From positions 14,756,001-14,820,000 of the forward strand of contig CM059449.1 in assembly GCA_030390025.1 (NCBI GenBank): 64,000 nucleotides of DNA. The letters run 5' to 3'. The first letter of the stretch is position 1. Each line of letters begins with the position of its first letter. This DNA comes from Squalus acanthias. Lineage: Eukaryota. Under the pieces are notes generated by a model, which ran no database searches, was not told the DNA's origin, and saw only the letters and a list, made by a program, of their open reading frames with translations. Below, piece by piece: positions 10,681 to 32,600 of the stretch. Both the position numbers and the translations under genes were made by a program.

Positions 10681-11614
10681 GTTGCCCAGAGTATTAAACC
10701 AGAGAAACAGCAGCACATTTATAGACACAGAGAAAGAGTTTCCTGCACATTTGCACCCAGATACACATGTAATCTGGGCGCGCACCAAATATATGTTTTA
10801 CATGTGCAATTTTTGGTGTAATTGAGTTGCACTTGCACCTACCATATGGCCAAGTCTTCTTGATGTCTTACGGTCCAGCAACCCTTCTCTCCAATCTAAT
10901 CTCCGCCCACAAAACTGGCCACGCCCCAACTCTCGAAACTGAGTATCCTCCAATTTCGCTCGTTGGACCAGATTTTCAGGCGCATCAGGAAACAATGATA
11001 TTTGTTTTTCCTTGTTGCAATTTTTATGCATTTTTAAAATAAATTGTCCTCACTGGGAGCTGCACTACATTTTGTGCTTCTTTTAATGCATTTTTATGGC
11101 AAAGTATAAGTCAGATTAGAAATTGAAAAGCAGGTTCTTTAAAGTACCGTACCTGATGTGCTTGGATGATAGTTCAATGAAATGAAACTTTTAATTTTAA
11201 GACTTGAAGAAGAAATATATTGAAATAAAAACAGAAAATGCTGGAAATGCTCAGCAGGTCAGGCAGCATCTGTCGAGAGAGAAACAGAATTAACGTTTCA
11301 GGTGAAAGACCTTTCAGCAGAAATATACTGATGCGGGTTCAGGAGTTTCCTTGGGCCCCATTGGTCTATTTTGCTTTACGCCTATTTTAAGTTCGGGCAT
11401 ATTCTAATGAGATTGGGAGGATACTTGGGTGTAATTTGACGTTGGCAATTTCGGTTGCAATTTCCAGGTTGCGCCCAAGGAGGAAAGTCCAGGCCCCGAT
11501 TCCCATCTTTCGTGGCTTTCACCGTCCCAATTGCAATGACGTTTGCCATTTTCTAACCTCGCTCTGCTAACGTCATGCTTTGTCTAATTTATTTGTCCTC
11601 CCACTGCAGGAAAA

Positions 11615-11657
11615 ATGAACCCCAGCCCCGTCCTATGGATACTGGCTGTCTTCTCGG
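11615..11657 (+). CDS. NCR3: Leader (signal peptide) exon MNPSPVLWILAVFS-G, phase 1
   Basis: Acceptor tttgtcctcccactgcag ends 11609; AAAATGA start context; hydrophobic peptide; donor TCGG|GTAAGC; phase matches all four V exons. Confidence 0.85.
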
Positions 11658-14600
11658 GTAAGCGGGCATTCCGTTGTTTCTTCGGGGTAGACGTCAGTCT
11701 CGGGCGGCAGTGCAAAAAATGGGCGATAACGAAGCGGCAATGGAACAGAAAAGCGGGCACAATGCAAACCGGGCCACCCATTCACCTGTTGTGTGCTACC
11801 GCCCAAGATGGATATGATGTCATTTGTCCATTGATCGGCATGTGTCAATCAGCTTCTGTCTCGGTGCATAATTACATCGAATGTACAGCACAGAAACAGG
11901 CTGTTCGGCCCAACAGCTCTATTCCGGTGTTTATGCTCCACACCAGCCTCCTTCCACCCTTTTCTTCTCACCCTATCAGCATGTCCTTCTATTCCTTTCT
12001 CCCTCACGTGTTTATCTGGCTTACCCTTAAATGCATCTATACTATTCGCCTCAACTACTCCCTGTGGTAGCGAGTTCCACATTCTCACCACTCTCTGGTT
12101 AAAGAAGTTTCTCCTGAATTCTCGATTGGATTTACTCGTGACTGTCTTATATTTATGACCCCTAGTTTTGGTCTCCCCCCACAAGTGGAAACATCTTCTC
12201 TACGTCTACCCTATCGAACCTCTTTCATAATCCTAACGGCCTCTCTTAGGTCACCCCTCAACCTTCTCTTTTCTAGAGAAGAGAGCCGCAGCTTGTTCAA
12301 TCTTTCCTGATAGGTATACCCTCTCAGTTCTGGTATCATCCTTGTGAATCTTTTTGGTGGCCCTCTCCAGTGGTTCTATATCCTTTTTATAATATGGAGA
12401 CCAGAACGGTGCACAGTACTTTAAATGTGGTCTACCCAAGCTTCTATACAAGTGAAAGCTTCACAATTTCTGTCAGGGCTAATAACTGAATGGACATTGT
12501 GCCGCAATGGTTCTACATATGTGACAGAGATTTAGGTGTAGATTGTTGAAAATCTACACAGCATCAAACCACTGTAGATCTGACTTGTTATTTGAATAAA
12601 CTTCAGTAGTGAGAAAAGTAAAGAGTTGCATTTATATAGCGCCTTTCACGACCTCAGGACGTCCCAAAGCGCTTTACAGCCAATGAAGGTACTCCCCTGC
12701 TCTTCTTCAAAAGAGTGCCAAGGGATCTTTTACGTCCACCTGAGAGAGCAGATGGGGCCTCGGTTTAACGTCTCATCCGAAAGACGGCACCTCTGACAGT
12801 GCAGCGCTCCTTCAGTACTGCACTGGGAATGTCAGCCTAGATTTTTGTGCTCAAGTCCCTGGAGTGGGACTTGAACCCACAACCTTCTGACTCATGAGGC
12901 GGGATTGCTGCCCACTGAGCCACAGCTGCCATTTTACCACAACGTGACGTACCATTATGATATGCCTCTACGTGTCAAATGGTATGTTGACCTTCATAGC
13001 GAGAGGATTCGAGTACAGGAGCAAGGATGTCTTGCTGCAGTTGTACAGGGCCTTGGTGAGACCACACCTTGAGCATTGTGTGCAGTTTTGGTCGCCTTAT
13101 CTGAGGAAGGATGTTCTTGTCATGGAGGGAGTGCAGCGAAGATTCACCAGACTGATACCTGGGATGGCAGGAATGACGTATGAAGAGAGATTGGGTCGAT
13201 TGGGCTTGTATTTGCTAGAGTTTAGAAGAATGAGAGGGGATTTCATTGAAACTTATAAAATTCTAACAGGACTAGACAGACTAGATGCAGGAAGGATGTT
13301 CCTGATGGCGGGGGAGTCCAGAACCAGAGGTCACAGTCTAAGGATAAGGGGTAAGCCATTTAGGACTGAGATGAGGAGGAATTTCTTCACCCAGAGAGTG
13401 GTGAACCTGTGGAATTCTCTACCACAGAAGGCAGTTGAGGCAAATTCATTAAATATATTCAAGAAGGAGTTAGATATATTTCTTAAGGCTAAAGGGATAT
13501 GGGGAGAAAGCAGGGACAGGGTACTGAATTTGGATGATCAGCCATGATCTCATTGAATGGCAGAACAGGCTCAAGGGGCCGAATGGCCTACTCCTGCTCC
13601 TATCTTCTATGTTTTGATGTCACTTTTATATTATTGAGGAGCTTAAGAATCAAATTCCGTGGGGGAGAACACTGAAAATGCTGAGAGAGATGAGGTCAAT
13701 GAAGTAATGTATTGGACGAGGTAAATATTAGATTTTGGGAGACTAGATTATAAGAAGACCGGTTTGAAGGAGACGAGGAGCTCCAGAATTTTGGACTCCG
13801 AGGAGAGAATGGGGTTGGTTAGAAGACGGCGCTCTGAGTCCTGATTTCAACACGGGGGGGATGCAGGGAGAAGGAACCACTTCCTGGTTTGTCTGGTCTC
13901 TCTGGATGTTGGAGAGGTCCTGTATATGGATCACCTAAGCTTGGTGACCATGTTGGATGCAGATTGGGGTGTGGAACTGAAAATTAAGGGGTGCTTGTTC
14001 TAGGGTAAAAGATCGATGAAATCCGCTGTTCATAGAATGATGCAGCACAGAAGGAGGCCATTAGGCCCATCGTGCTTGTGTTGGCTCTTTGAAAGCTCTA
14101 TCCAGTTAGACACACTCCCCCTGCTCTTTCCCCATAGCCCTGCAAATGTTTCCTTTTCAAGTCTATATCCAATTCCCTTTTGAGAGTTAATATTGAATCT
14201 GCTTCCACCGCCCTTTCAGGCAGCGCATTCCAGATCAAAACAACTCGCTGTGTCAAAACCTTTCTCCTCATTTCCCCCCTGGTTCTTTATCCATTTATCT
14301 TAAACCTGTGCCCTTCATAACTGTTCCTACACGATTGTCTCTCAAAGTCCCACCTCCCAGTCAGACTTTTATTTTTGTGATTTCCAGGGATTAACGCTGA
14401 GAGGTTCACAGTTACTCAGAAGGTGCCCAGTATTCCGGCGGTGGAAGGGGAGACCGTGCTCATCCCCTGTACCCACACAGCCAACGTCTCTAAGGACATA
14501 TGGTCTTACACCTGGCACAAGGACGCCAGAAATGGAACAGAAGTCTCCAGCAGAACAGCAGAGTACAGAGGACGGATCCACACACCCAGAGATGAGGATT

Positions 14601-17600
14601 TTGTCAATAACAGAGACGCTTCCATTCTAATAAAGGACGTGCGTGTGACCGATTCCGGGGTGTATTACTGCAAAGTGCTAACGATGGAACTCGGCGAGGA
14701 ATTTGGAGCCGGAACACGTCTCACTGTCAGAGGTGAGTGATTTGCCTGCCTGCAATATCGTGCGACCCATGGGTGGGAGAATTGGCCCCACAGTCTAATG
14801 GCCCTATCTCCGACTGGTGATCTCCGAAGTGAGACATTTTGGTAGAAAGAACGAGGAGAGGACATATAAACTAAAGGGTATGATCCTAAAGGGGGTGCAT
14901 GAACAGAAAGACCTGGGGGTACATGTGCACAAATCATTGAAGGTGGCAGGACAGGCTGAGAAAGTGGTTAAAAAAGCATATGGGATACTGGGCTTCATAA
15001 ATAGAAGCATAGAGTACAAAAACAAGGAAGTTATGATGAACCTTTATAAAACACTGGTTCGGCCTCAGCTGGAGTATTGTGTCCAATTCTGGGCACCGCA
15101 CTTTAGGAAGGATGTGAAGGCCTTAGAGAGGGTGCAGAAAAGATTTACAAGAATGATTTGAGGGATGAGGGACTTCAGTTACGAGGATAGACTGCAGAAG
15201 CTGGGGTTGTTCTCCTTTGTAAGGGTTTTTTTTTGTCGGGCTTATTTGTAGGTCAGCCAGTTATGTTTTCCTGGACTGTCCTGCGCCCGCTATGCGGTTG
15301 CGAATCGCTATCCCCTTTATTAGTTCTGAGCCCAGGACTTATCGAGCGGCGATAAAGACAAACGAACAGACCCGTGGATTGGTGCGAGGAAAACCAATGT
15401 TTATTTACAGAAGTAAAACTACAGAGAAACAGTATCATATGAAAACGGTTTTACACTTAGCATGGGAAGAGAACGGACACATCGAGGGAAAATCCTAAAA
15501 TTACAATTTTAGCAATATCCCCATTAATCCCCACCCCTATGCCTAACTAGAATTGTCTTGCGACAGCCAGAAGATAATGCTCACCGTTGAAATGGATGGA
15601 AAAACCTGGCCCTGTGCTCTGTTTCTGCCGTCGACACGTGGCTCCGAAGTTTCTGGCAGTCTTCTTTCTTAGCTGCTGGCAGACAGAGCGAACCGAGGGT
15701 CCAGGCAGAGAGAGAGAAAAATGGCTGGGTCTTCCCAGTTATACCCCCTCCGGTCGCTCTAATCTTCCCACCGATCAGCACATTTCTATTGTCTGATCTG
15801 GGCATGATGAATTTTAACAAAAGGTAATGGTCTCGGCCCATGATGCTAGATGGCCGGTAATGGTGTGATACCAGTTCTTCAACTGCCACCCTATTGTTCG
15901 ACAGGTTGGATGATTGTCCAGAACAGTTCCGTTGATGGGCCCAGCGCCGTCTCAATGTCTCCGCTGATTACTTGAGTAAACACCTTGAAGGCCTTATGCA
16001 TAGACCTGATTGTAATGCATAAGGAAAGGTCCTGTCCTGTTGCAGACATCAGAATACACAAGCTGACACGAGGTCCGACCGCGGCCATTTTATGTCCTGG
16101 ATTTTAAAACTCAGTCTGACCAGGGTTTCTTTATTAATAAGTCCAACAACAAACATCTTCGGGGGTGGGGGGGGGGGAAACACATGAAATTTAAGGGGTG
16201 CTTGTTCTAGGGTAAAAGATCGATGAAATCCGCTGTTCATAGAATGATGCAGCACAGAAGGAGGCCATTAGGCCCATCGTGCTTGTGTTGGCTCTTTGAA
16301 AGCTCTATCCAGTTAGACACACTCCCCCTGCTCTTTCCCCATAGCCCTGCAAATGTTTCCTTTTCAAGTCTATATCCAATTCCCTTTTGAGAGTTAATAT
16401 TGAATCTGCTTCCACCGCCCTTTCAGGCAGCGCATTCCAGATCAAAACAACTCACTGTGTCAAAACCTTTCTCCTCATTTCCCCCCTGGTTCTATATCCA
16501 TTTATCTTAAACCTGTGCCCTTCATAACTGTTCCTACACGATTGTCTCTCAAAGTCCCACCTCCCAGTCAGACTTTTATTTTTGTGATTTCCAGGGATTA
16601 ACGCTGAGAGGTTCACAGTTACTCAGAAGGTGCCCAGTATTCCGGCGGTGGAAGGGGAGACCGTGCTCATCCCCTGTACCCACACAGCCAACGTCTCTAA
16701 GGACATATGGTCTTACACCTGGCACAAGGACACCAGAAATGGAGCAGAAGTCTCCAGCAGAACAGCAGAGTACAGAGGACGGATCCACACACCCAGAGAT
16801 GAGGATTTTGTCAATAACAGAGACGCTTCCATTCTAATAAAGGACGTGCGTGTGACCGATTCCGGGGTGTATTACTGCAAAGTGCTAACGATGGAACTCG
16901 GCGAGGAATTTGGAGCCGGAACACGTCTCACTGTCAGAGGTGAGTGATTTGCCTGCCTGCAATATCGTGCGACCCATGGGTGGGAGAATTGGCCCCACAG
17001 TCTAATGGCCCTATCTCCGACTGGTGATCTCTGAAGTGAGACATTTTGGTAGAAAGAACAAGGAGAGGACATATAAACTAAAGGGTATGATCCTAAAGGG
17101 GGTGCATGAACAGAAAGACCTGGGGGTACATGTGCACAAATCATTGAAGGTGGCAGGACAGGCTGAGAAAGTGGTTAAAAAAGCATATGGGATACTGGGC
17201 TTCATAAATAGAAGCATAGAGTACAAACACGAGGAAGTTATGATGAACCTTTATAAAACACTGGTTCGGCCTCAGCTGGAGTATTGTGTCCAATTCTGGG
17301 CACTGCACTTTAGGAAGGATGTGAAGGCCTTAGAGAGGGTGCAGAAAAGATTTACAAGAATGATTTCATGGATGAGGGACTTCAGTTACGTGGATAGACT
17401 GCAGAAGCTGGGGTTATTCTCCTTTGTAAGGGTTTTTTTTTTGACTGGCTTATTTGTAGGTCAGCCAGTTATGTTTTCCTGGACTGTCCTGCGCCCGCTA
17501 TGCGGTTGCGAATCGCTATCCCCTTTATTAGTTCTGAGCCCAGGACTTATCGAGCGGCGATAAAGACAAACGAACAGACCCGTGGATTGGTGCGAGGAAA

Positions 17601-20600
17601 ACCAATGTTTATTTACAGAAGTAAAACTACAGAGAAACAGTATCATATGAAAACGGTTTTACACTTAGCATGGGAAGAGAACGGACACATCGAGGGAAAA
17701 TCCTAAAATTACAATTTTAGCAATATCCCCATTAATCCCCACCCTTATGCCTAACTAGAATTGTCTTGCGACAGCCAGAAGATAATGCTCACCGTTGAAA
17801 TGGATGGAAAAACCTGGCCCTGTGCTCTGTTTCTGCCATCGACACGTGGCTCCGAAGTTTCTGGTAGTCTTCTTTCTTAGCTGCTGGCAGACAGAGCGAA
17901 CCGAGGGTCCAGGCAGAGAGAGAGAAAAACATGGCTGGGTCTTCCCAGTTATCCCCCCTCCGGTCGCTCTAATCTTCCCACCGATCAGCACATTTCTATT
18001 GTCTGATCTGGGCATGATGAATTTTAACAAAAGGTACTGGTCTCGGCCCATCATGCTAGATGGCCGGTAATGGTGTGATACCAGTTCTTCAACTGCCACC
18101 CTATTGTTCGACAGGTTGGATGATTGTCTAGAACAGTTCCGTTGATGGGCCCAGCGCCGTCTCAATGTCTCCGCTGATTACTTGAGCAAACACCTTGAAG
18201 GCCTTATGCATAGACCTGATTGTAATGCATAAGGAAAGGTCCTGTCCTGTTGCAGACATCGGAATACACCAGCTGACACGAGGTCCGACCGCGGCCATTT
18301 TATGTCCTGGATTTTAAAACTCAGTCTGACCAGGGTTTCTTTATTAATAAGTCCAACAACAAACATCTTCGGGGGTGGCGGGGGGGGGAACACATGAAAA
18401 TTAAGGGGTGCTTGTTCTAGGGTAAATGATCGATGAAATCCGCTGTTCATAGAATGATGCAGCACAGCAGGAGGCCATTAGGCCCATCGTGCTTGTGTTG
18501 GCTCTTTGAAAGCTCTATCCAGTTAGACACACTCCCCCTGCTCTTTCCCCATAGCCCTGCAAATGTTTCCTTTTCAAGTCTATATCCAATTCCCTTTTGA
18601 GAGTTAATATTGAATCTGCTTCCACCGCCCTTTCAGGCAGCGCATTCCAGATCAAAACAACTCACTGTGTCAAAACCTTTCTCCTCATTTCCCCCCTGGT
18701 TCTTTATCCATTTATCTTAAACCTGTGCCCTTCATAACTGTTCCTACACGATTGTCTCTCAAAGTCCCACCTCCCAGTCAGACTTTTATTTTTGTGATTT
18801 CCAGGGATTAACGCTGAGAGGTTCACAGTTACTCAGAAGGTGCCCAGTATTCCGGCGGTGGAAGGGGAGACCGTGCTCATCCCCTGTACCTACACAGCCA
18901 ACGTCTCTAAGGCGATATGGTCTTACACCTGGCACAAGGACGCCAGAAATGGAGCAGAAGTCTCCAACGGAACAGCAGAGTACAGAGGACGGATCCACAC
19001 ACCCAGAGATGAGGATTTTTTCAATACCAGAGACGCTTCCATTCTAATAAAGGACGTGAGTGTGACCGATTCCGGGGTGTATTACTGCAAAGTGCTAATG
19101 ATGGAACTCGGCGAGGAATTTGGAGCCGGAACACGTCTCATTGTCGGAGGTGAGTGATTTGACTGCCTGCAATATCGTGCGACCCATGGGTGGGAGAATT
19201 GGCCCCACAGTCTAATGGCCCTATCTCCGACTGGTGATCTCCGAAGTGATACATTTTGGTAGAAAGAACGAGGAGAGGACATATAAACTAAAGGGTATGA
19301 TCCTAAAGGGGGTGCATGAACAGAAAGACCTGGGGGTACATGTGCACAAATCATTGAAGGTGGCAGGACAGGCTGAGAAAGCGGTTAAAAAAGCATATGG
19401 GATACTGGGCTTCATAAATAGAAGCATAGAGTACAAAAACAAGGAAGTTATGATGAACCTTTATAAAACACTGGTTCGGCCTCAGCTGGAGTATTGTGTC
19501 CAATTCTGGGCACCGCACTTTAGGAAGGATGTGAAGGCCTTAGAGAGGGTGCAGAAAAGATTTACAAGAATGATTCCAGGGATGAGGGACTTCAGTTACG
19601 TGGATAGACTGGAGAAGCTGGGGTTGTTCTCCTTAGAGCAGAGAAGGTTGAGAGGAGATTTGATAGAGATGTTCAAAACCATGAGGGGTCCAGACAGAGT
19701 AGATAGAGAGAAACTGTTCCCATTGGCAGAAGGGTCGAGAACCAGAGGACACAGATTTAAGTTGATTGGCAAAAGAACCAAAGGCGAAATGAGGAAAAAC
19801 TTTTTTATGCAGCGAATGGTAAGGATCTGGAATTCACTGCCTGAAAGGGTGGTGGAGGCAGACTCAATCGTCGCTTTCAAAAGGGAATTGGATAAGTACC
19901 TGAAGGGGAAAAACAATTGCAGGGCTACGGGGAAAGGGCGGGGTGAGTGGGACTAGCTGAAGTGCTCTTGCAGAGAGCCGGCACGGGCTCGACGGGCCGA
20001 ATGGCCTCCTTCTGTGCTGTAACCATTCTATGGTGCCTCTGCCAGTATGGTTTCACTGTGGGGAAATTCCGATTGTGGAATCACCCTCCGCTGCAGAGCA
20101 GAGACTATTTAACCATTTTAAATAGCCGGTTGTCGACTTTGCGATTATATAGTGCAGGAACCTCTATGTTAAAGAATAACACTCGTCGGAAATCAAACCG
20201 GTTGGCTGGCTGCATAGTTATAACAAAGGATCTAAGGAAGGACATACTTGCCTTGGAGGCGGTGCAACAAAGGTTCACGAGATTGATTCCTGGGATGAGA
20301 GGGCTGTCCTATGAGGAGAGATTGTGTAGAATGGGACTATACTCTCTGGAGTTTTGAAGAATGAGAGGTGATCTCATTGAAACATACAAGATTCGGAAGG
20401 GGATTGACAGGGTAGATGCTGAGAGGTTGTTTCCCCTGGCTGGAGTGTCTAGAACTAGGGGGCATAGTCTCAGGATAAGGGGAAGGCCATGTAATAACAA
20501 CAACTTGTAGTGCCTTTAATGTAGTAAAACGTTCCAAGGCGCTGCACAGGAGTATTTTAAGACAAAATAAATTGACACAGAGCCACATGAGGATAAATTA

Positions 20601-23600
20601 GGGCAGGTGACCAAAAGCTTGGTCAAAGAGGTAGGTTTTAAGGAGCGTCTTAAAGGAGGAAAGAGAGGTAGCGAGGCGGAGAGGTTTAGGGAGGGAATTC
20701 CAGAGCTTAAGGCCCAGGCAACAGAAAGCACGGCCATCAATGGTTGAGCGATTATAATCAGGGATGCTCAAGAGGGCAGATACCTCGGGGTGTTGTGGGG
20801 CTGAAGGTGATTACAGAGATAGGAAGGGGCGAGGCCATGGAGGGATTTGAAAACAAGGATGAGAATTTTGAAATCGAGGCGCTGCTTAAGCAGCAGCCAA
20901 TGTAGGTCAGCGAGCACAGGCGAGATGGGGAGGAATTTCTTCACTCAGAGGGTTGTGAATCTTTGGAATTCTCTTCCCCAGAGGGCTGTGAATGCTGAGT
21001 CTTTGAGTATATTCAAGGCTGAGATCGATAGATTTTTGGACCCATGGGGAATCAAGGGATATGGAGATCGGGCAGGAAAGTGGAGTTGAGGTCGATGATC
21101 AGCCATGATCTTATTGAATGGCGGAGCAGGCTCGAGGGGCCGTATGGCCTACTCCTGCTCCTATTTCTTATGTTCTCAAGTGGGCATGCTGACCAAAAAC
21201 AAGTCCGTATTTGAATCCAAACCAATATCCGACTCCCTGTCCTGCTCTGGAGACTGACCGAGGGAGGGTTGTGCCTTTGAGCAGCTGGTGAGTGTTGCCG
21301 CTAATCGGGAATTCACTCTGAACGTTGACCCTTCATTACTGGTCCTGCATAACTTAGTCCCAACTTCTAATCAGATAGCAGCGACCTTTCATTCTTCTGA
21401 TTTCCAGGGATTGACGCTGAGAGGTTCACAGTTACTCAGAAGGTGCCCAGTATTCTGGCGGTGGAAGGGGAGACTGTGCTCATCCCCTGTACCTACACAG
21501 CCAACGTCTCTATGGTGATAGGGTCTTACACCTGGCACAAGGACACCAGAAATGGTAAAGTTGTCTCCAACGGGACAACAGAGTACAGAGGCCGGATCTT
21601 CAGGCCCAAGGAAGAGGATTTTTTAAACGCTTCCATTCTAATAAAGGAGGTGGGAGTGAACGATTCCGGGATGTATTACTGCAAAGTGTGGAAGAATGGA
21701 CTCGGCGAGGAGTATGGAGCCGGAACGCATCTCACTGTGAGCGGTGAGTGATTTGCCTGCCTGCATTATCATCGAATTGCAATTGTAATTACCCATATAC
21801 TGACGGAAGATTAGTTTTCAACTTGCTGCCCATGTGTAAAACTGGCGTTAAGAATTGGCTGCCCATTGTAGAAATCATTTCGCTAACAGGTGGCAGATTG
21901 GTAACGCCAGTTTTACTCCAGGGTGATAAATTGAAGATCTTACCCTACATTTCTGTAAATGACCGGTGCAATGTGTAGATTATGTACTGGAACTTTATAC
22001 ACCACATAAAGGGCGGGCGGTGCTACAGGTTAGGCCCTTTCCCCTCTGGGACTGGGTGGTGCAGTGGGTCAGACACTGTCCTTTCCCCCTCTGGGACTGG
22101 GTGGTGTGGTGTGTCAGACACTGTCCTTTCACCCTCTGGGACTGGGTGGTGTGGTGGGTCAGACACTGTCCTTTCCCCCTCTGGGACTGGGTGGTGTGGT
22201 GTGTCAGACACTGTCCTTTCCCCCTCTGGGACTGGGTGGTGTGGTGGGTCAGACACTGTCCTTTCCCCCTCTGGGACTGGGTGGTGCAGTGGGTCAGACA
22301 CTGTCCTTTCCCCCTCTGGGACTGGGTGGTGCAGTGGGTCAGACACTGTCCTTTCCCCCTCTGGGACTGGGTGGTGCAGTGGGTCAGACACTGTCCTTTC
22401 CACCTCTGGGACTGGGCGGTGTGGTGGGTAAGACACTGTCCTTTCTCCCTCTGGGACTGGGTGGTGCAGTGGGTCAGACACTGTCCTTTCACCCTCTGGG
22501 ACTGGGCGGTGCAGTGGGTCAGACACTGTCCTTTCCCCCTCTGGGACTGGGTGGTGCAGTGGGTCAGACACTGTCCTTTCCCCCTCTGGGACTGGGTGGT
22601 GCAGTGGGTCGACACTGTCCTTTCACCCTCTGGGACTGGGTGGTGCAGTGGGTCAGACACTGTCCTTTCCCATCTGGGACTGGGTGGTGCGGTGGGTCAG
22701 ACACTGTCTTTTCACCATCTGGGACTGGGTGGTGCAGTGGGTCAGACACTGTCCTTTCCCCCTCTGGGACTGGGCGGTGCAGTGTGTCAGACACTGTCCT
22801 TTCCCCCTCTGGGACTGGGTGGTGCAGTGGGTCAGACACTGTCCTTTCACCCTCTGGGACTGGGTGGTGCAGTGGGTCAGACACTGTCCTTTCACCCTCT
22901 GGGACTGGGCGGTGCAGTGGGTCAGACACTGTCCTTTCTCCCTCTGGGACTGGGCGGTGCAGTGGGTCAGACACTGTCCTTTCCCCCTCTAGGACTGGGT
23001 GGTGCAGTGGGTCAGACACTGTCCTTTCTCCCTCTGGGACTGGGCGGTGCAGTGGGTCAGACACTGTCCTTTCCCCCTCTGGGACTGGGTGGTGCAGTGG
23101 GTCAGACACTGTCCTTTCACCCTCTGGGACTGTGTGGTGCAGTGAGTCAGGCTCTGTTCTTTTCCCCTCTGGGACTGGGTGGTGCGGTGGGTCAGACACT
23201 GTCCTTTCCCCCTCTGGGACTGGGTGGTGAGGTGGGTCAGACACTGTCCTTTCCCCCTCTGGGACTGGGTGGTGCAGTGGGTCAGGCACTGTCCTTTCCC
23301 CCTCTGGGACTGGGTGGTGCAGTGGGTCAGACACTGTCCTTTCTCCCTCTGGGACTGGGTGGTGCAGTGGGTCAGACACTGTCCTTTCCCCTCTGGGACT
23401 GGGTGGTGCAGTGGGTCAGACACTGTCCTTTCACCCTCTGGGACTGGGCGGTGCAGTGGGTCAGACACTGTCCTTTCCCCCTCTGGGACTGGGTGGTGCA
23501 GTGGGTCAGACACTGTCCTTTCCCCCTCTGGGACTGGGTGGTGCAGTGGGTCAGACACTGTCCTTTCCCCCTCTGGGACTGGGTGGTGCAGTGGGTCAGA

Positions 23601-26600
23601 CACTGTCCTTTCCCCCTCTGGGACTGGGTGGTGCGGTGGGTCAGACACTGTCCTTTCCCCCTCTGGGACTGGGTGGTGCGGTGGGTCAGACACTGTCCTT
23701 TCCCCCTCTGGGACTGGGCGGTGTGGTGGGTAAGACACTGTCCTTTCTCCCTCTGGGACTGGGTGGTGCAGTGGGTCAGACACTGTCCTTTCACCCTCTG
23801 GGACTGGGCGGTGCAGTGGGTCAGACACTGTCCTTTCCCCCTCTGGGACTGGGTGGTGCAGTGGGTCAGACACTGTCCTTTCCCCCTCTGGGACTGGGTG
23901 GTGCAGTGGGTCAGACACTGTCCTTTCACCCTCTGGGACTGGGTGGTGCAGTGGGTCAGACACTGTCCTTTCCCCCTCTGGGACTGGGTGGTGCGGTGGG
24001 TCAGACACTGTCTTTTCACCCTCTGGGACTGGGTGGTGCAGTGGGTCAGACACTGTCCGTTCCCCCTCTGGGACTGGGCGGTGCAGTGAGTCAGACACTG
24101 TCCTTTCCCCCTCTGGGACTGGGTGGTGCAGTGGGTCAGACACTGTCCTTTCACCCTCTGGGACTGGGTGGTGCAGTGGGTCAGACACTGTCCTTTCACC
24201 CTCTGGGACTGGGCGGTGCAGTGGGTCAGACACTGTCCTTTCTCCCTCTGGGACTGGGCGGTGCAGTGGGTCAGACACTGTCCTTTCCCCCTCTGGGACT
24301 GGGTGGTGCAGTGGGTCAGACACTGTCCTTTCTCCCTCTGGGACTGGGCTGTGCAGTGGGTCAGACACTGTCCTTTCCCCCTCTGGGACTGGGTGGTGCA
24401 GTGGGTCAGACACTGTCCTTTCCCCCTCTGGGACTGGGTGGTGCAGTGGGTCAGACACTGTCCTTTCCCCCTCTGGGACTGTGTGGTGCAGTGGGTCAGA
24501 CACTGTCCTTTCCCCCTCTGGGACTGGGCGGTGCTGGTGGGTCAGACACTGTCCTTTCTCCCTCTGGGACTGGGTGGTGCAGTGGGTCAGACACTGTCCT
24601 TTCACCCTCTGGGACTGGGCGGTGCAGTGGGTCAGACACTGTCCTTTCCCCCTCTGGGACTGGGTGGTGCAGTGGGTCAGACACTGTCCTTTCCCCCTCT
24701 GGGACTGGGTGGTGCAGGTGGGTCAGACACTGTCCTTTTCACCCTCTGGGACTGGGTGGTGCAGTGGGTCAGACACTGTCCTTTCCCCCTCTGGGACTGG
24801 GCGGTGCAGTGGGTCAGACACTGTCCTTTCCCCCTCTGGGACTGGGTGGTGCAGTGGGTCAGACACTGTCCTTTCACCCTCTGGGACTGGGTGGTGCAGT
24901 GGGTCAGACACTGTCCTTTCACCCTCTGGGACTGGGCGGTGCAGTGGGTCAGACACTGTCCTTTCTCCCTCTGGGACTGGGCGGTGCAGTGGGTCAGACA
25001 CTGTCCTTTCCCCCTCTGGGACTGGGTGGTGCAGTGGGTCAGACACTGTCCTTTCTCCCTCTGGGACTGGGCGGTGCAGTGGGTCAGACACTGTCCTTTC
25101 CCCCTCTGGGACTGGGTGGTGCAGTGGGTCAGACACTGTCCTTTCCCCCTCTGGGACTGGGTGGTGCGGTGGGTCAGACACTGTCCTTTCCCCCTCTGGG
25201 ACTGGGCGGTGTGGTGGGTCAGACACTGTCCTTTCTCCCTCTGGGACTGGGTGGTGCAGTGGGTCAGACACTGTCCTTTCACCCTCTGGGACTGGGCGGT
25301 GCAGTGGGTCAGACACTGTCCTTTCCCCCTCTGGGACTGGGTGGTGCAGTGGGTCAGACACTGTCCTTTCCCACTCTGGGACTGGGTGGTGCAGTGGGTC
25401 AGACACTGTCCTTTCACCCTCTGGGACTGGGTGGTGCAGTGGGTCAGACACTGTCCTTTCCCCCTCTGGGACTGGGTGGTGCGGTGGGTCAGACACTGTC
25501 TTTTAACCCTCTGGGACTGGGTGGTGCAGTGGGTCAGACACTGTCCGTTCCCCCTCTGGGACTGGGCGGTGCAGTGAGTCAGACACTGTCCTTTCCCCCT
25601 CTGGGACTGGGTGGTGCAGTGGGTCAGACACTGTCCTTTCACCCTCTGGGACTGGGTGGTGCAGTGGGTCAGACACTGTCCTTTCACCCTCTGGGACTGG
25701 GCGGTGCAGTGGGTCAGACACTGTCCTTTCTCCCTCTGGGACTGGGCGGTGCAGTGGGTCAGACACTGTCCTTTCCCCCTCTGGGACTGGGTGGTGCAGT
25801 GGGTCAGACACTGTCCTTTCTCCCTCTGGGACTGGGCTGTGCAGTGGGTCAGACACTGTCCTTTCCCCCTCTGGGACTGGGTGGTGCAGTGGGTCAGACA
25901 CTGTCCTTTCCCCCTCTGGGACTGGGTGGTGCAGTGGGTCAGACACTGTCCTTTCCCCCTCTGGGACTGTGTGGTGCAGTGGGTCAGACACTGTCCTTTC
26001 CCCCTCTGGGACTGGGCGGTGTGGTGGGTAAGACACTGTCCTTTCTCCCTCTGGGACTGGGTGGTGCAGTGGGTCAGACACTGTCCTTTCACCCTCTGGG
26101 ACTGGGCGGTGCAGTGGGTCAGACACTGTCCTTTCCCCCTCTGGGACTGGGTGGTGCAGTGGGTCAGACACTGTCCTTTCCCCCTCTGGGACTGGGTGGT
26201 GCAGTGGGTCAGACACTGTCCTTTCACCCTCTGGGACTGGGTGGTGCAGTGGGTCAGACACTGTCCTTTCCCCCTCTGGGACTGGGTGGTGCGGTGGGTC
26301 AGACACTGTCTTTTCACCCTCTGGGACTGGGTGGTGCAGTGGGTCAGACACTGTCCGTTCCCCCTCTGGGACTGGGCGGTGCAGTGAGTCAGACACTGTC
26401 CTTTCCCCCTCTGGGACTGGGTGGTGCAGTGGGTCAGACACTGTCCTTTCACCCTCTGGGACTGGGTGGTGCAGTGGGTCAGACACTGTCCTTTCACCCT
26501 CTGGGACTGGGCGGTGCAGTGGGTCAGACACTGTCCTTTCTCCCTCTGGGACTGGGCGGTGCAGTGGGTCAGACACTGTCCTTTCCCCCTCTGGGACTGG

Positions 26601-29600
26601 GTGGTGCAGTGGGTCAGACACTGTCCTTTCTCCCTCTGGGACTGGGCGGTGCAGTGGGTCAGACACTGTCCTTTCCCCCTCTGGGACTGGGTGGTGCGGT
26701 GGGTCAGACACTGTCTTTCACCCTCTGGGACTGGGTGGTGCAGTGGGTCAGACACTGTCCGTTCCCCCTCTGGGACTGGGCGGTGCAGTGAGTCAGACAC
26801 TGTCCTTTCCCCCTCTGGGACTGGGTGGTGCAGTGGGTCAGACACTGTCCTTTCACCCTCTGGGACTGGGTGGTGCAGTGGGTCAGACACTGTCCTTTCA
26901 CCCTCTGGGACTGGGCGGTGCAGTGGGTCAGACACTGTCCTTTCTCCCTCTGGGACTGGGCGGTGCAGTGGGTCAGACACTGTCCTTTCCCCCTCTGGGA
27001 CTGGGTGGTGCAGTGGGTCAGACACTGTCCTTTCTCCCTCTGGGACTGGGCGGTGCAGTGGGTCAGACACTGTCCTTTCCCCCTCTGGGACTGGGTGGTG
27101 CAGTGGGTCAGACACTGTCCTTTCCCCCTCTGGGACTGGGTGGTGCGGTGGGTCAGACACTGTCCTTTCCCCCTCTGGGACTGGGCGGTGTGGTGGGTAA
27201 GACACTGTCCTTTCTCCCTCTGGGACTGGGTGGTGCAGTGGGTCAGACACTGTCCTTTCACCCTCTGGGACTGGGCGGTGCAGTGGGTCAGACACTGTCC
27301 TTTCCCCCTCTGGGACTGGGTGGTGCAGTGGGTCAGACACTGTCCTTTCCCACTCTGGGACTGGGTGGTGCAGTGGGTCAGACACTGTCCTTTCACCCTC
27401 TGGGACTGGGTGGTGCAGTGGGTCAGACACTGTCCTTTCCCCCTCTGGGACTGGGTGGTGCGGTGGGTCAGACACTGTCTTTTAACCCTCTGGGACTGGG
27501 TGGTGCAGTGGGTCAGACACTGTCCGTTCCCCCTCTGGGACTGGGCGGTGCAGTGAGTCAGACACTGTCCTTTCCCCCTCTGGGACTGGGTGGTGCAGTG
27601 GGTCAGACACTGTCCTTTCACCCTCTGGGACTGGGTGGTGCAGTGGGTCAGACACTGTCCTTTCACCCTCTGGGACTGGGCGGTGCAGTGGGTCAGACAC
27701 TGTCCTTTCTCCCTCTGGGACTGGGCGGTGCAGTGGGTCAGACACTGTCCTTTCCCCCTCTGGGACTGGGTGGTGCAGTGGGTCAGACACTGTCCTTTCT
27801 CCCTCTGGGACTGGGCTGTGCAGTGGGTCAGACACTGTCCTTTCCCCCTCTGGGACCGGGTGGTGCAGTGGGTCAGACATTGTCCTTTCCCCCTCTGGGA
27901 CTGGGTGGTGCAGTGGGTCAGACACTGTCCTTTCCCCCTCTGGGACTGTGTGGTGCAGTGGGTCAGACACTGTCCTTTCCCCCTCTGGGACTGGGCGGTG
28001 TGGTGGGTAAGACACTGTCCTTTCTCCCTCTGGGACTGGGTGGTGCAGTGGGTCAGACACTGTCCTTTCACCCTCTGGGACTGGGCGGTGCAGTGGGTCA
28101 GACACTGTCCTTTCCCCCTCTGGGACTGGGTGGTGCAGTGGGTCAGACACTGTCCTTTCCCCCTCTGGGACTGGGTGGTGCAGTGGGTCAGACACTGTCC
28201 TTTCACCCTCTGGGACTGGGTGGTGCAGTGGGTCAGACACTGTCCTTTCCCCCTCTGGGACTGGGTGGTGCGGTGGGTCAGACACTGTCTTTTCACCCTC
28301 TGGGACTGGGTGGTGCAGTGGGTCAGACACTGTCCGTTCCCCCTCTGGGACTGGGCGGTGCAGTGAGTCAGACACTGTCCTTTCCCCCTCTGGGACTGGG
28401 TGGTGCAGTGGGTCAGACACTGTCCTTTCACCCTCTGGGACTGGGTGGTGCAGTGGGTCAGACACTGTCCTTTCACCCTCTGGGACTGGGCGGTGCAGTG
28501 GGTCAGACACTGTCCTTTCTCCCTCTGGGACTGGGCGGTGCAGTGGGTCAGACACTGTCCTTTCCCCCTCTGGGACTGGGTGGTGCAGTGGGTCAGACAC
28601 TGTCCTTTCTCCCTCTGGGACTGGGCGGTGCAGTGGGTCAGACACTGTCCTTTCCCCCTCTGGGACTGGGTGGTGCAGTGGGTCAGACACTGTCCTTTCA
28701 ACCTCTGGGACTGGGTGGTGCAGTGGGTCAGGCTCTGTTCTTTTCCCCTCTGGGACTGGGTGGTGCAGTGGGTCAGACACTGTCCTTTCCCCCTCTGGGA
28801 CTGGGTGGTGTGGTGGGTCAGACACTGTCCTTTCCCCATCTGGGACTGGGTGGTGCGGTTGGTCAGACACTGTCCTTTCTCCCTCTGGGACTGGGTGGTG
28901 CAGTGGGTCAGACACTGTCCTTTCCCCTTCTGGGACTGGGTGGTGCAGTGGGTCAGACACTGTCCTTTCACCCTCTGGGACTGGGTGGTGCAGTGGGTCA
29001 GACAATGTCCTTTCACCCTCTGGGACTGGGTGGTGCAGTGGGTCAGACACTGTCCTTTCACCCTCTGGGACTGGGTGGTGCAGTGGGTCAGACTCTGTCC
29101 TTTCACCCTCTGGGACTGGGTGGTGCAGTGGGTCAGTCGCTGTCCTTTCCCCCTCTGGGACTGGGTGGTGCAGTGGGTCAGACACTGTCCTTTCTCCCTC
29201 TGGGACTGGGTGGTGCAGTGGGTCAGACACTGTCCTTTCACCCTCTGGGACTGGGTGGTGCAGTGGGTCAGACTCTGTCCTTTCACCCTCTGGGACTGGG
29301 TGGTGCAGTGGGTCAGTCGCTGTCCTTTCCCCCTCTGGGACTGGGTGGTGCAGTGGGTCAGACACTGTCCTTTCTCCCTCTGGGACTGGGCGGTGCAGTG
29401 GGTCAGACACTGTCCTTTCCCCCTCTGGGACTGGGTGGTGCAGTGGGTCAGACACTGTCCTTTCACCCTCTGGGACTGGGTGGTGCAGTGGGTCAGGCTC
29501 AGTTCTTTTCCCCTCTGGACTGGGTGGTGCGGTGGGTCAGACACTGTCCTTTCCCCCTCTGGGACTGGGTGGTGCGGTGGGTCAGACACTGTCCTTTCCC

Positions 29601-32600
29601 CCTCTGGGACTGGGTGGTGCGGTGGGTCAGACACTGTCCTTTCTCCCTCTGGGACTGGGTGGTGCGGTGGGTCAGACACTGTCCTTTCACCCTCTGGGAC
29701 TGGGTGGTGCAGTGGGTCAGACTCTGTCCTTTCACCCTCTGGGACTGGGTGGTGCAGTGGGTCAGTCGCTGTCCTTTCCCCCTCTGGGACTGGGTGGTGC
29801 AGTGGGTCAGACACTGTCCTTTCTACCTCTGGGACTGGGTGGTGCAGTGGGTCAGACACTGTCCTTTCACCCTCTGGGACTGGGTGGTGCAGTGGGTCAG
29901 ACTCTGTCCTTTCACCCTCTGGGACTGGGTGGTGCAGTGGGTCAGTCGCTGTCCTTTCCCCCTCTGGGACTGGGTGGTGCAGTGGGTCAGACACTGTCCT
30001 TTCTCCCTCTGGGACTGGGCGGTGCAGTGGGTCAGACACTGTCCTTTCCCCCTCTGGGACTGAGTGGTGCAGTGGGTCAGACACTGTCCTTTCACCCTCT
30101 GGGACTGGGTGGTGCAGTGGGTCAGGCTCTGTTCTTTTCCCCTCTGGGACTGGGTGGTGCGGTGGGTCAGACACTGTCCTTTCCCCCTCTGGGACTGGGT
30201 GGTGTGGTGGGTCAGACACTGTCCTTTCACCCTCTGGGACTGGGTGGTGCGGTGGGTCAGACACTGTCCTTTCTCCCTCTGGGACTGGGTGGTGCAGTGG
30301 GTCAGACACTGTCCTTTCTCCCTCTGGGACTGGGTGGTGCAGTGGGTCAGACACTGTCCTTTCCCCTTCTGGGACTGGGTGGTGCAGTGGGTCAGACACT
30401 GTCCTTTCACCCTCTGGGACTGGGTGGTGCAGTGGGTCAGACTCTGTCCTTTCACCCTCTGGGACTGGGTGGTACGGTGGGTCAGACACTGTCTTTTCCC
30501 CTCTGGGACTGGGCAAAGGATCATTGAAATCTCCCCCGAAAAGCTTTTAAGGCTGGGGGGTCAATTGAACATTTCAAAATTGAGATCGATAGATTTTTGT
30601 TAGGCAAATGTAGTAGTGGATATGGAACCAAGGCGGATCGATGGAGTTAAGATCCATATCAACCATAATTTAATTGAATGGTGGAACAGGCTCGAGGGGC
30701 TGAATGGCCTCCTCTTGTTCCTGTCTTCCAATGTTCCTATCTGACTTGCTTTCTTCTCCACAGCGAAAACAAAATCTATCATGCTTCTATTGTCAATCGT
30801 ATCCATCAGCACGGTTGTGGAAGTGAGCATCCTTCTAATTATTGCACTGCTCTGTGTGTATCTACGCAGAATGAAAGGTAATGGTGTTAATCATTTGCTG
30901 TTTGCCAATTGCTAAGGCTGTGAATTTTTGTGTTGGGAAGATTGACATCTGACTACTTAAGGCAGAGGTATCCAATCTGCGGCCCTCGAGGTACGTTGGC
31001 AAGTGGGTACAGTTCTTCTTAGGCAGTCCCTCGGAACCGAGGATGACTTACTTCCCCATTAAAAATGAGTCCTCAGGTGACTGATGATTCCAATGCGGGA
31101 CCGACAGTCTCTGTCACAGGTGGGGCAGACAGTGATTGAAGGGGCGGGTGGGTGGGGTGCTTGGGTTGACGTGCGCTCCTTGCACTGCTTGCGCTTGGCT
31201 TCCGCTTGCTCCCAGCGATGAGACTCGAGGTGTTCGGCGCCTTCCCGGATGCTTCTCCTCCACTTTGTGCGGTCTTGGGCCAGGGATTCCCAGGTGTCGG
31301 TGGGGATGTTGCACTTTTTCAAGGAGGCTTTGAGGGTGTCCTTGAAGCGTTTCCTCTGCCCACCTGGGGCTCTCTTGCTGTGTCGGAGCTCCGAGTAGAG
31401 CGCTTGTTTTGGGAGTCTCGCAGTCGGGCATGCGGACGATGTGGCCCGTCCATCGGAGCTGACCGAGCGTGGTCAAAGCTTCGATGCTGGGGATGTTGGC
31501 CTGAGCGAGAACACTGACGTTGGTGCGCCTATCCTGCCAATGGATTTGCAGGATCTTGCGGAGGCAGCGTTGGTGGTACCGCTCCAGTGCTTTGAGGTGC
31601 CTGCTGTACATGGTCCATGTATACGGTAGTGTAGTAGAGATGGTACTGGACCAGCAACCCAGTGGTCGTGTGTTAAAACCGCACCCTAGTTCGCTGTGAA
31701 TATAAATTTAATAAATGTGATGATTTATTAGCGGGGGGTTGGGGGGGGTGGCGTTGGTGATTATAAAAGTTGCGGAACTTTGTAAAACCTTAGCTGGGAA
31801 TCTGCCATTGTGTCCTGATCTACAGGTAACTTCAGTTGAGGCTTGATGCTCTCTCAAGTATGAGCTACTTACTTAGAATAGCAACTGCTTCAAGAAAGAA
31901 ATACTTGCAATTATATAGCGCCTTTCATGCTCTCAGGACATCCCAAAGTGAACAGCCAATGAGGTACCTTTGAAGTGGAGTCACTGTTGTAATGTAGGGA
32001 ACCGCAGCAGCCAATTTGCGCACAGCCAGCTCCCACTCACAGCAATGTGACAATGACCAGATAAGCTGTTTTTGTTATGTTGATTGAAGGATAAATATTG
32101 GCCCAGGACACCGGGGAGAACTCCTCTGCTCTTCTTCGAAATAGTAGCCATGGGATCTTTTACCGAGAGAGCAGACGGGGCCTCGGTTTAACGTCTCATC
32201 CGAAAGATGGCACCTCTGACAGTGCAGCACCCCCGCAGCACTGCCTTGGAGTGTCGGCCTGGATTTTTGTGCTCAGATCTCTGGAGTGGGGACTTGAACC
32301 CACAACCTTCTGACTCAGAGGCGAGAGAGAGCGCTACCCACTGAGCCACGGCTGAAAAAGTCTCACCACCAGCTTCTTAGGGAAATCAGGAATGGGTAAT
32401 AATGGTTTCCTATATGAACAAATAAAAAAAAAAATGTAGGGGTAATTTTAAGCTAACTCGCTGGGCGGGAATCCCACGGGATTCGGTGGAACGCCGGTTT
32501 TACACTTGCTCCAATATTGACTTCAACGAAGAGCGAAATTGGGTGGGGTGTAAAACCGGCGTTGCACCCGATCCCGTCAGTTTCCCGATGAGTGGGTTAG

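What the first reader, a model, noticed from the sequence alone, without database searches (positions are those of the whole stretch)
11615..30877. NKp30-like receptor with a cassette of four interchangeable V exons between one leader and one TM exon
Seen: one leader exon (ends phase 1), four intact phase 1-1 VJ-type V exons and one TM exon. I found no leader, TM or constant exon between the V copies, so they are not four separate genes. Every V exon begins G-I-N/D-A-E-R-F, which reads as the end of the signal peptide plus a probable cleavage site (INA|ERF), so each is built to follow the leader directly. Established: mammalian NCR3 has a single non-rearranging VJ domain, and NCR3 homologues are known in sharks. 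Inference: this is either (a) a splice-selected variable-domain repertoire that needs no RAG (one V per mRNA, Dscam-like logic), or (b) a receptor with 1-4 tandem V domains; all 15 non-empty subsets stay in frame. I do not know of this layout being described for this family, but I cannot search.
Basis: partly seen in the sequence, partly recalled or inferred. Interest (0 to 1): 0.92.

Follow-up and report, generated by a model that had tools for sequence, protein, structure and literature searches.

The report
Shark NKp30-like receptor, four tandem V exons
This is one shark immune-receptor gene related to NKp30 in which the exon for the binding domain has been copied to four in a row, most likely giving a receptor with several binding domains in series rather than one chosen per message.

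Summary
One leader exon (11615-11657), four intact VJ-type V exons (14388-14732, 16595-16939, 18805-19149, 21408-21743; all phase 1-1, lengths divisible by 3, near-consensus splice sites) and one TM exon (30764-30877) lie on the + strand. No second leader or TM copy was found. Human NKp30 is the best solved match (E 4e-15; next family 1e-8).

V1-V3 are a young 2.2-kb tandem duplication (98.3% identity). V4 is older.

The "not described" part is weakened. RefSeq models hold two to five such V domains in one protein in 8 of 10 elasmobranch species seen. All 3 horn-shark isoforms keep three V. The 5 great-white isoforms keep three or two (V2 or V3 skipped); none keeps one.

So reading (b), V domains in series with some exon skipping, is favoured. 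Reading (a), one V per mRNA, has no support.

RNA-like contigs show V3 and V4 exons, and a V1/V2-like exon in a second coded organism, with fits that stop exactly at predicted splice sites. No V-V junction could be read, and V1/V2 were not covered in 3 of 4 runs.

The scan noted a two-V locus elsewhere in this genome. The key paper (Kinlein 2021) was not held.

The parts
11615..11657 (+). Leader exon: MNPSPVLWILAVFS plus the first base of a Gly codon; the donor leaves phase 1. It may begin at an acceptor at 11610.
   Evidence: Sequence read. The only leader match in the window to 3 homologue leaders. Single copy by blastn-short.
13978..19634 (+). Tandem duplication array, about 2.56 units of about 2208 nt. 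Each unit holds about 410 nt of upstream intron, one V exon and a LINE fragment.
   Evidence: Self-blastn: 13978-17424 against 16185-19634, 98.29% over 3450 nt. Copy spacing 2207 and 2210 nt.
14388..14732 (+). V1 exon, 345 nt, phase 1-1, VJ-type V-set domain.
16595..16939 (+). V2 exon, 345 nt. It differs from V1 at 2 bases, and both change the amino acid.
   Evidence: A 240-letter contig of run X4 fits from 16593 to 16777, and its first 52 letters are unlike the intron (record 25).
18805..19149 (+). V3 exon, 345 nt. It differs from V1 at 12 bases in 11 codons, all amino-acid-changing.
   Evidence: Run X1 has a contig at 18858-19031 with 0 other letters; run X3 has a contig at 18804-18985 (records 3 and 18).
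21408..21743 (+). V4 exon, 336 nt, membrane-proximal. About 75% amino-acid identity to V1-V3. It carries a 3-residue deletion shared with the last V of the horn-shark and catshark models.
   Evidence: A 333-letter contig of run X2 fits 21483-21743 and then runs on for 72 unlike letters, so the fit ends exactly at the donor (record 16).
22036..30513 (.). 45-bp minisatellite, 188.5 copies, filling most of the 9020-nt V4-TM intron.
   Evidence: Tandem Repeats Finder, 94% matches. GC is 0.61-0.62 here against about 0.47 around it.
30764..30877 (+). TM exon, phase 1-1: (A)KTKSIMLLLSIVSISTVVEVSILLIIALLCVYLRRMK, with Glu inside the membrane span.
   Evidence: Aligns to the TM exons of 4 homologues (P0156, P0151, P0153, P0154). 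Single copy.
38235..52269 (+). Cytoplasmic-tail exons, with approximate pieces at 38235-38273, 38366-38440, 40622-40663, 42830-42877, 44685-44790, 48096-48134 and 52192-52269. They are colinear with homologue tails. They show that the TM exon continues into the same kind of gene as the relatives.
   Evidence: tblastn of homologues, for example HDYGYDELN at 48096-48134. Exact exon borders were not determined here.
19746..20019 (.). LINE 3' tail in the V3-V4 intron that is inverted relative to copies upstream of V1 (14043-14314), V2 (16250-16521) and V3 (18566-18731). They could pair in the pre-mRNA. Function unproven.
   Evidence: Inverted repeats I1-I5, 77-80% complementary over 109-166 nt.

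Best explanation
This is a single gene of the elasmobranch NKp30/NCR3-like receptor family. Its V exon was multiplied inside the leader-TM intron.

V4 is the old membrane-proximal V. V1-V3 are young copies of one 2.2-kb unit, probably made by unequal crossing-over between retrotransposon-rich introns.

Every V exon has the same phase (1-1), a length divisible by three and near-consensus splice sites. The default product therefore carries two or more V domains in series on one TM segment and one long tyrosine-motif tail. The G-I-N-A-E-R-F start of each exon then serves as an interdomain linker.

Some mRNAs probably skip one or more V exons, giving receptors with different numbers of domains, as in the great-white isoforms. 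The copy number of the young unit may also differ between individuals.

Shown: the gene anatomy, the NKp30 likeness, the duplication, multi-V models in relatives, and the presence of V3 and V4 exons in spliced-looking contigs.

Inferred: serial inclusion in this species, skipping, and copy-number variation.
For: Anatomy.

NKp30 likeness. The four best PDB chains are all NCR3 (E 4.3e-15 to 5.8e-15); the next family scores 1.4e-08.

Relatives: the six best of 947 HMMER hits hold 2-5 matched V stretches. These are RefSeq models of Mobula (5 V and 2 V), Heterodontus (3 V) and Scyliorhinus (2 V), joined by Carcharodon (3 V; a second gene with 2 V), Cetorhinus, Hemitrygon (3 V), Hypanus (2 V) and partial Stegostoma models. 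That makes 8 of 10 species.

Isoforms: 3 of 3 Heterodontus isoforms keep all three V. The Carcharodon LOC121291130 isoforms X1, X2 and X5 keep three V, X3 lacks the second and X4 lacks the third. So 0 of 8 isoforms has one V.

Tree: in rays the first and last V domains form separate clades (100/100 each) across 3 species. The last V of Heterodontus groups with the last V of Scyliorhinus (98/97). A distal-plus-proximal V architecture is therefore old.

Selection: V3 differs from V1 at 12 of 345 exon bases against 10 of 895 flanking bases (Fisher p 0.008). All changes fall in amino-acid-changing codons, pS = 0. The copies appear to be translated and under selection.

Contigs: 0 of the 5 contigs listed on V exons extends into an intron. 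Two of them run on as unlike sequence exactly at a predicted acceptor or donor.
Against: No V-to-V junction was read in this species. Read laying showed 15 of 139 joints, all of them in repeats, and the runs are contigs at depth 1-4.

In 3 of 4 runs no contig lies on the 5' half of V2 (which also stands in for V1), although V3 is covered in 3 of them and V4 in 2 (table 2). V1/V2 may therefore be skipped, little used, or absent from those animals.

The RefSeq models are predictions and their RNA support cannot be seen here. Near-identical exons can produce false junctions and false isoforms.

The tree does not settle whether V4 is the orthologue of the proximal V of other sharks. V1-V4 form one clade at 71/89, and the alternative is not rejected (AU p 0.21).
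Confidence: 0.6

Rival explanations
1. Only some of the array is used. The usual mRNA carries V4 alone, or one distal V plus V4 (for example V3-V4). The youngest copies V1/V2 are rarely spliced in, or are missing in many individuals.
For: Runs X1, X2 and X3 have depth 0 on 16500-16853, while X1-X3 cover V3 and X1-X2 cover V4 (table 2). Scyliorhinus, Hypanus and one Mobula gene have exactly two V domains, one distal and one proximal.
Against: V1 and V2 have the same acceptor and donor as V3. Both V1-V2 differences change the amino acid. Contigs show presence, not absence, and coverage is patchy at depth 1-4: for example, V4's first 75 bases are also uncovered in X2. Run X4 holds a V2-like exon piece.
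Confidence: 0.22
2. Splice-selected repertoire: each mRNA carries exactly one of the four V exons (mutually exclusive, Dscam-like), perhaps with cell-specific choice.
For: Four same-size, same-phase exons lie between constant exons. The copies have diversified by amino-acid changes. One inverted LINE tail lies downstream of V3, with complementary copies upstream of V1, V2 and V3. That is formally a docking/selector-like layout.
Against: Nothing enforces exclusivity. Co-inclusion keeps the frame, the introns are 1862, 1865 and 2258 nt, and all sites are GT-AG and near consensus. 0 of 8 isoforms of the two multi-V relatives has one V. The inverted repeats are retrotransposon fragments, and further + strand copies of the same element lie in these introns. 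Pairing would loop out runs of exons rather than select one.
Confidence: 0.07
3. Four separate single-V genes, or pseudo-copies, whose leaders and TM exons were missed.
For: One leader-like ORF with a phase-1 GT lies at 21095-21179, 228 nt upstream of V4.
Against: That ORF lies in a retrotransposon 3' tail that recurs in the window. No leader or TM copy was found by blastn-short, by tblastn with 8 homologues, or by the scan between V1-V2 and V2-V3. The 2.2-kb unit is too small to hold the tail exons, which occur once.
Confidence: 0.03
4. V1-V3 are an assembly artefact: alleles or reads of a single V exon laid in tandem.
For: The units are 98.3% alike.
Against: The units differ at 1.1-1.8% of flanking bases, and V3 differs at 12 exon bases. 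A contig of run X1 matches V3 exactly over 174 bases that include V3-specific positions. That run may, however, come from the same animal as the assembly. Tandem V exons are the rule in relatives.
Confidence: 0.03

Closest known systems
Mammalian NKp30 (NCR3), e.g. PDB 3NOI, 3PV6, 6YJP, 9FWW
   Same: A non-rearranging VJ-type V domain encoded by one phase-1 exon between a leader and a TM exon. It is the best solved match to V1 (E 4e-15, aligned over residues 11-113).
   Different: NKp30 has one V domain. By my recollection it also has an Arg in the TM segment and a short tail. This gene has four V exons, a Glu in the TM segment and a long multi-exon tail.
RefSeq multi-V models of other elasmobranchs: Carcharodon LOC121291130 (XP_041068137-141), Heterodontus XP_067865770-75, Scyliorhinus XP_038671255, Mobula XP_062903898 and XP_062903900, Hemitrygon XP_072892315, Hypanus XP_059825197
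   Same: Leader, 2-5 V domains each starting G-I-x-A-E-K-F, a TM segment with a polar residue, and a tail with HDYGYDELN. V identity to this gene is 54-65%. The great-white isoforms differ by whole V exons.
   Different: They are named 'polymeric immunoglobulin receptor-like', 'protein turtle homolog B-like', 'signal-regulatory protein beta-2-like' or 'uncharacterized'. None is filed as NCR3. Here there are four V exons, three of them 90-98% alike at the protein level.
Nurse shark NCR3 family (Kinlein et al. 2021, Immunogenetics 73:333; GenBank MT914154-914161)
   Same: A diversified NCR3 family in a shark. The accession numbers were seen in PMC12227049 (passage) and the reference in PMC10450919. 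The content of eight divergent subtypes is recalled from the abstract, not seen here.
   Different: I do not know whether multi-V genes are described there. The paper was not held.
Polymeric Ig receptor, and CEACAM-type receptors with exon-skipped isoforms (recalled)
   Same: This gene would work like them: several Ig V-like domains in series, each encoded by its own in-phase exon, with the number of domains changed by exon skipping. pIgR chains are among the next PDB hits (E about 2e-08).
   Different: Not the same family. Those domains are old and non-equivalent. Here three are very young copies.
Dscam1-type clusters of mutually exclusive exons (recalled)
   Same: An array of same-size, same-phase variant exons encoding an Ig domain.
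   Different: No feature that forbids co-inclusion was found. The relatives' models co-include their V exons.
LPA kringle IV-2 array (recalled)
   Same: A young tandem genomic unit carrying in-frame exons that are all spliced in, so protein size follows copy number. This is a model for what V1-V3 may do.
   Different: Unrelated protein. Copy-number variation was not tested here.

Membership tests
NKp30 / NCR3 | V domain of VJ type: V and a J-like G strand (FGxGTxLxV) fused in one germline exon | tested here: met
   FGAGTRLTV (V1, V2), FGAGTRLIV (V3) and YGAGTHLTV (V4) lie at the end of each exon. Pfam V-set covers profile positions 5-108 of 109.
NKp30 / NCR3 | NCR3 is the nearest characterised protein | tested here: met
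   The four best PDB sequences are all NCR3, E 4.3e-15 to 5.8e-15; the next is amphioxus IgVJ-C2 at 1.4e-08. One direction only; no reciprocal search was made.
NKp30 / NCR3 | Ectodomain of a single V domain | tested here: not met
   Four V exons lie between one leader and one TM exon. The make-up of the transcripts was not resolved.
NKp30 / NCR3 | Basic TM residue for pairing with CD3-zeta / FcR-gamma, and a short tail (recalled definition) | tested here: not met
   The TM exon reads ..SISTVVEVSILLIIALL.. with Glu and no Arg or Lys in the span. The tail is long and homologous to 200-aa-plus tails of relatives.
NKp30 / NCR3 | Linkage to the MHC; binding of B7H6 | not testable with these tools
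   The rest of the window holds LINE fragments and minisatellites and no marker gene. No binding assay is possible.
Elasmobranch multi-V NKp30-like receptors (RefSeq models, no published name found) | Colinear leader, two or more V domains, TM with a polar residue, and a tail with SLKTF and HDYGYDELN motifs | tested here: met
   tblastn of P0156, P0151, P0159, P0153, P0154 and others maps these parts in this order, once each except V. V identity is 54-65%.
Dscam-type mutually exclusive exon cluster | Co-inclusion is prevented (frameshift/NMD, too-short introns, U2/U12 mismatch) | tested here: not met
   Exon lengths are 345, 345, 345 and 336 nt, all phase 1-1. Introns are 1862, 1865 and 2258 nt. 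All sites are ag|G..G|gtgagt.
Dscam-type mutually exclusive exon cluster | One docking site with competing selector sequences | tested here: inconclusive
   One LINE tail at 19746-20019 is complementary (77-80%) to copies upstream of V1, V2 and V3. These are repeat fragments, and further + strand copies of the same element lie in these introns. V4 has no such arm.
Dscam-type mutually exclusive exon cluster | Exactly one variant exon per mRNA | not testable with these tools
   Only low-depth contigs were available and no V-V or leader-V joint was listed. In relatives, 0 of 8 isoform models has one V.

The most novel reading that the evidence does not exclude
The four V exons are used combinatorially. 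Different cells or cell types splice different subsets (up to 15 in-frame ectodomains), helped by the retrotransposon-derived inverted repeats that can loop out V1-V3, V2-V3 or V3. Individuals also differ in the number of 2.2-kb units. That would give a germline, RAG-independent way of varying a VJ-type receptor in the lineage closest to the origin of antigen receptors.
Probability: 0.12. Interest if true: 0.85.

Novelty: new variant of a known kind. Interest (0 to 1): 0.5.

Why it matters
NKp30 is treated as the one natural-killer receptor conserved from sharks to humans, and as a single non-rearranging VJ domain related to the ancestor of antibody and T-cell-receptor V domains.

This locus, together with the unrecognised models in 8 of the 10 other elasmobranch species seen, shows that the family in sharks and rays is commonly multi-V. 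The V exons keep being duplicated inside the gene in either the distal or the proximal position. The young copies diverge by amino-acid changes.

It gives a concrete, cheaply testable case (one RT-PCR from leader to TM) of how domain number and domain sequence of a VJ receptor can vary without RAG. It also flags a set of RefSeq proteins whose names (pIgR-like, turtle-like, SIRP-beta-like) hide what they are.

Tried and rejected
Own-species protein models. A search with V4 (candidates of 61-194 aa) gave 2 candidates and no hit. Searches with the horn-shark 3-V model (13 hits) and the great-white X1 isoform (10 hits) returned only RefSeq proteins of other species. I found no model of this locus and no transcript-derived multi-V protein.

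Junction reading. Read laying returned contigs only. Its joint table showed 15 of 139 joints, all within retrotransposon parts, and its loose-end table showed 24 of 2330 entries, none at a V exon. The letters beyond the V2 acceptor and the V4 donor could therefore not be seen. For record 25 the fit begins two bases before the exon. That suits an upstream exon ending in AG (V1-V3 end ..GAG) better than the leader (..CGG). This is only a hint.

Orthology of V4 with the proximal V of other sharks. The shared 3-residue deletion suggests it, but the tree puts V1-V4 together (71/89) and the AU test leaves both readings open (p 0.21). Before building the tree I dropped 12 of 56 domain rows because they were redundant isoforms of the same genes.

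Pfam on eight ORFs between the V exons found nothing. They were then identified as the C-terminal part of a LINE ORF by 60% identity to an ORF in the window that carries RVT_1.

Signal-peptide cleavage at INA|ERF could not be tested, because no predictor is on hand.

Rejected readings: separate genes, assembly artefact and Dscam-like exclusivity, for the reasons given under rival explanations.

Supplements were not asked for. Those of PMC12227049 and of Kinlein 2021 may show NCR3 gene structures.

Full report
WHAT IS THERE.

On the + strand the window holds one leader exon. Its ATG is at 11615, followed by 14 codons and one base, with the donor G|gtaagc after 11657.

Four exons share the borders ..tgatttccag|GGATT.. 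and ..G|gtgagtgat. V1 is 14388-14732, V2 is 16595-16939 and V3 is 18805-19149, each 345 nt. V4 is 21408-21743, 336 nt.

One TM exon spans 30764-30877, with borders ..ccacag|CG..AAAG|gtaatg.

All five downstream exons are phase 1-1 and divisible by three, so any subset of V exons keeps the frame. This follows directly from the coordinates.

Each V translation has the Ig Cys-Trp-Cys triad and a fused J motif. Pfam V-set was found in the 3 exons I submitted, E about 1e-14; V2 was not submitted.

tblastn of the four V translations finds exactly four places in the 64 kb. The leader and TM exons are single-copy by blastn-short and by tblastn of eight homologues. A crude scan that recovers both true exons as controls finds no leader-like or TM-like exon between V1-V2 or V2-V3. 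It finds one leader-like ORF at 21095-21179 inside a retrotransposon tail.

The inter-V DNA holds 3' fragments of a LINE ORF. It is 60% identical over 222 aa to a window ORF that carries RVT_1.

The V4-TM intron (9020 nt) is almost filled by a 45-bp minisatellite of 188.5 copies.

Downstream, pieces of the tail align colinearly with the tails of homologues between 38235 and 52269.

HOW IT AROSE.

Positions 13978-17424 align to 16185-19634 at 98.29% over 3450 nt. That makes about 2.56 tandem units of about 2208 nt, each with one V exon. V4 shares only the exon and about 25 flanking bases with them, at 85%.

V1 and V2 differ at 2 exon bases, both amino-acid-changing. V3 differs from either at 12 bases in 11 codons, all amino-acid-changing.

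Exon divergence exceeds flank divergence for V1-V3: 12/345 against 10/895, Fisher p 0.008. For V2-V3 it is 12/345 against 16/895, p 0.087. V1-V2 goes the other way: 2/345 against 26/1862, p 0.30. With pS = 0, the excess of amino-acid-changing over silent changes is only marginally significant (binomial p 0.04).

It suggests that the copies are translated and selected. The statistics are weak.

WHAT FAMILY.

The four best PDB sequences are all human NKp30/NCR3 (E 4.3e-15 to 5.8e-15). The next family scores 1.4e-08.

In a HMMER scan of 1.84 billion representatives, 947 proteins scored E <= 0.001. The six best hold 2-5 matched V stretches. By name they are RefSeq models:
- Mobula hypostoma 'polymeric immunoglobulin receptor-like' (5 V) and an uncharacterised 2-V protein.
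- Heterodontus francisci 'protein turtle homolog B-like' (3 V).
- Scyliorhinus canicula (2 V).

Further searches added Carcharodon carcharias (3 V, and a second gene with 2 V), Cetorhinus maximus (partial, at least 2 V), Hemitrygon akajei (3 V), Hypanus sabinus (2 V) and two partial Stegostoma models that cross a V-V border.

Of the 10 elasmobranch species with named proteins in this clade, 8 have at least one multi-V model. Only the two Chiloscyllium species showed single-V models alone. One more Mobula protein (P0171) was listed but not examined.

These models have the same order of parts as this locus, a polar residue in the TM segment (often Glu) and the same tail motifs.

WHICH READING.

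The three horn-shark isoforms all carry three V and differ only in the tail.

Among the five great-white isoforms of LOC121291130, X1, X2 and X5 carry V1-V2-V3. X3 carries V1 plus V3, and X4 carries V1 plus V2 (alignment A1).

So in public annotation whole-V-exon skipping exists, and no isoform (0 of 8) has one V.

In the domain tree the first and last V domains of rays form two separate clades (100/100 each) over three species. The last V of Heterodontus groups with the last V of Scyliorhinus (98/97). A distal-plus-proximal V architecture is therefore old, and lineage-specific duplications are laid on top of it. Mobula multiplied the proximal type. Hemitrygon, Carcharodon and this species multiplied within one type.

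Window V4 shares a 3-residue deletion with those proximal V domains. However, the tree joins V1-V4 (71/89) and the AU test rejects neither arrangement (p 0.21).

The G-I-N/D-A-E-K/R-F start also stands at internal V domains of relatives. It does not show that each V must follow the leader.

Nothing in the gene forbids co-inclusion. The frame is kept, the introns are 1862, 1865 and 2258 nt, and all sites are GT-AG and near consensus.

I therefore favour V domains in series with optional skipping, and put one-V-per-mRNA at about 0.07.

RNA.

One search found five runs in two coded organisms. Four hold 21-50% of V3's 34 sampled words. All are labelled 'RNA?', which is a guess.

All four holders were laid on 16500-21800, as contigs only. 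Five contigs were listed on V exons, and none of the five enters an intron:
- X1 record 3 matches V3 exactly (18858-19031).
- X1 record 8 lies inside V4.
- X2 record 16 fits 21483-21743 and then runs on for 72 unlike letters, exactly at the V4 donor.
- X3 record 18 begins at 18804.
- X4 record 25 has 52 unlike letters and then fits from 16593, exactly at the V2 acceptor.

This looks like spliced RNA and confirms three of the predicted splice borders.

It does not show which exon is joined to which. The joint table listed 15 of 139 joints, all in repeats.

Against constitutive four-V inclusion, X1-X3 have depth 0 on the first half of V2, which would also catch V1. Depth is only 1-4 and coverage is patchy.

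KNOWN OR NEW.

My literature searches found no paper that describes a multi-V NKp30/NCR3.

I saw passages of PMC12227049, which call NCR3 a non-rearranging MHC-linked VJ gene and list nurse-shark NCR3 accessions MT914154-914161. I saw passages of PMC10751288. I saw the reference to Kinlein et al. 2021 in PMC10450919.

Kinlein 2021, Flajnik 2012 and Ohta & Flajnik 2015 were not held. I therefore cannot say that the layout is not in print.

The scan itself noted a two-V locus 582 kb away in this genome (s1-888267; not checked by me).

I class the finding as a new variant of a known kind: an NKp30-family receptor with an intragenic V-exon array. It is already present, unrecognised, in database models of other species.

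Noticed in passing
window 11590-11614: The leader exon is preceded by a pyrimidine tract and cag| at 11609/11610, with GGA AAA (G-K) in frame before the ATG. Great-white isoforms X1, X3 and X4 have an N-terminal extension ending ..VMGK before the same Met. An upstream 5' exon, possibly with an alternative start, may exist.
   Followed up: no
window 30764-30877: The TM segment carries Glu. The aligned TM position in relatives is Glu in Heterodontus, Carcharodon and Stegostoma, and a different residue (Asn, His, Gln or Gly) in Chiloscyllium, Mobula and Hypanus. A polar TM residue looks like a family feature.
   Followed up: partly
window 22036-30513 and 6730-10800: Two large minisatellites flank the V region. 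One is the 45-bp, 8.5-kb array in the V4-TM intron. The other is a repeat upstream of the gene that reads PNMVTQS / HPTWSPN in ORFs and is interrupted by a LINE with an RVT_1 domain.
   Followed up: no
window 14043-14314, 16250-16521, 18566-18731 versus 19746-20019: An antisense LINE-tail fragment sits 74-345 nt upstream of each of V1-V3. It is 77-80% complementary to a sense copy in the V3-V4 intron. Pairing in the pre-mRNA could loop out V3, V2-V3 or V1-V3. Read laying listed 'opposite strands' joints at 18535/19964 and 18663/19799, most simply from other copies of the repeat.
   Followed up: partly
P0156/P0165 (Carcharodon LOC121291130), residues about 123-136 of P0156: The models repeat the 7 residues TELTVRG between V1 and V2. 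This could be a small extra exon, an alternative donor or a model error.
   Followed up: no
RefSeq names of the homologues: Clear NKp30-like multi-V receptors are named 'polymeric immunoglobulin receptor-like', 'protein turtle homolog B-like' or 'signal-regulatory protein beta-2-like'. Only one Stegostoma fragment is named 'natural cytotoxicity triggering receptor 3-like'.
   Followed up: partly
window 21095-21179: A retrotransposon 3' tail provides an ATG, a hydrophobic stretch (GLLLLLFLMFS) and a phase-1 GT 228 nt upstream of V4. It is most likely chance, but it could in principle act as an alternative leader for V4.
   Followed up: no
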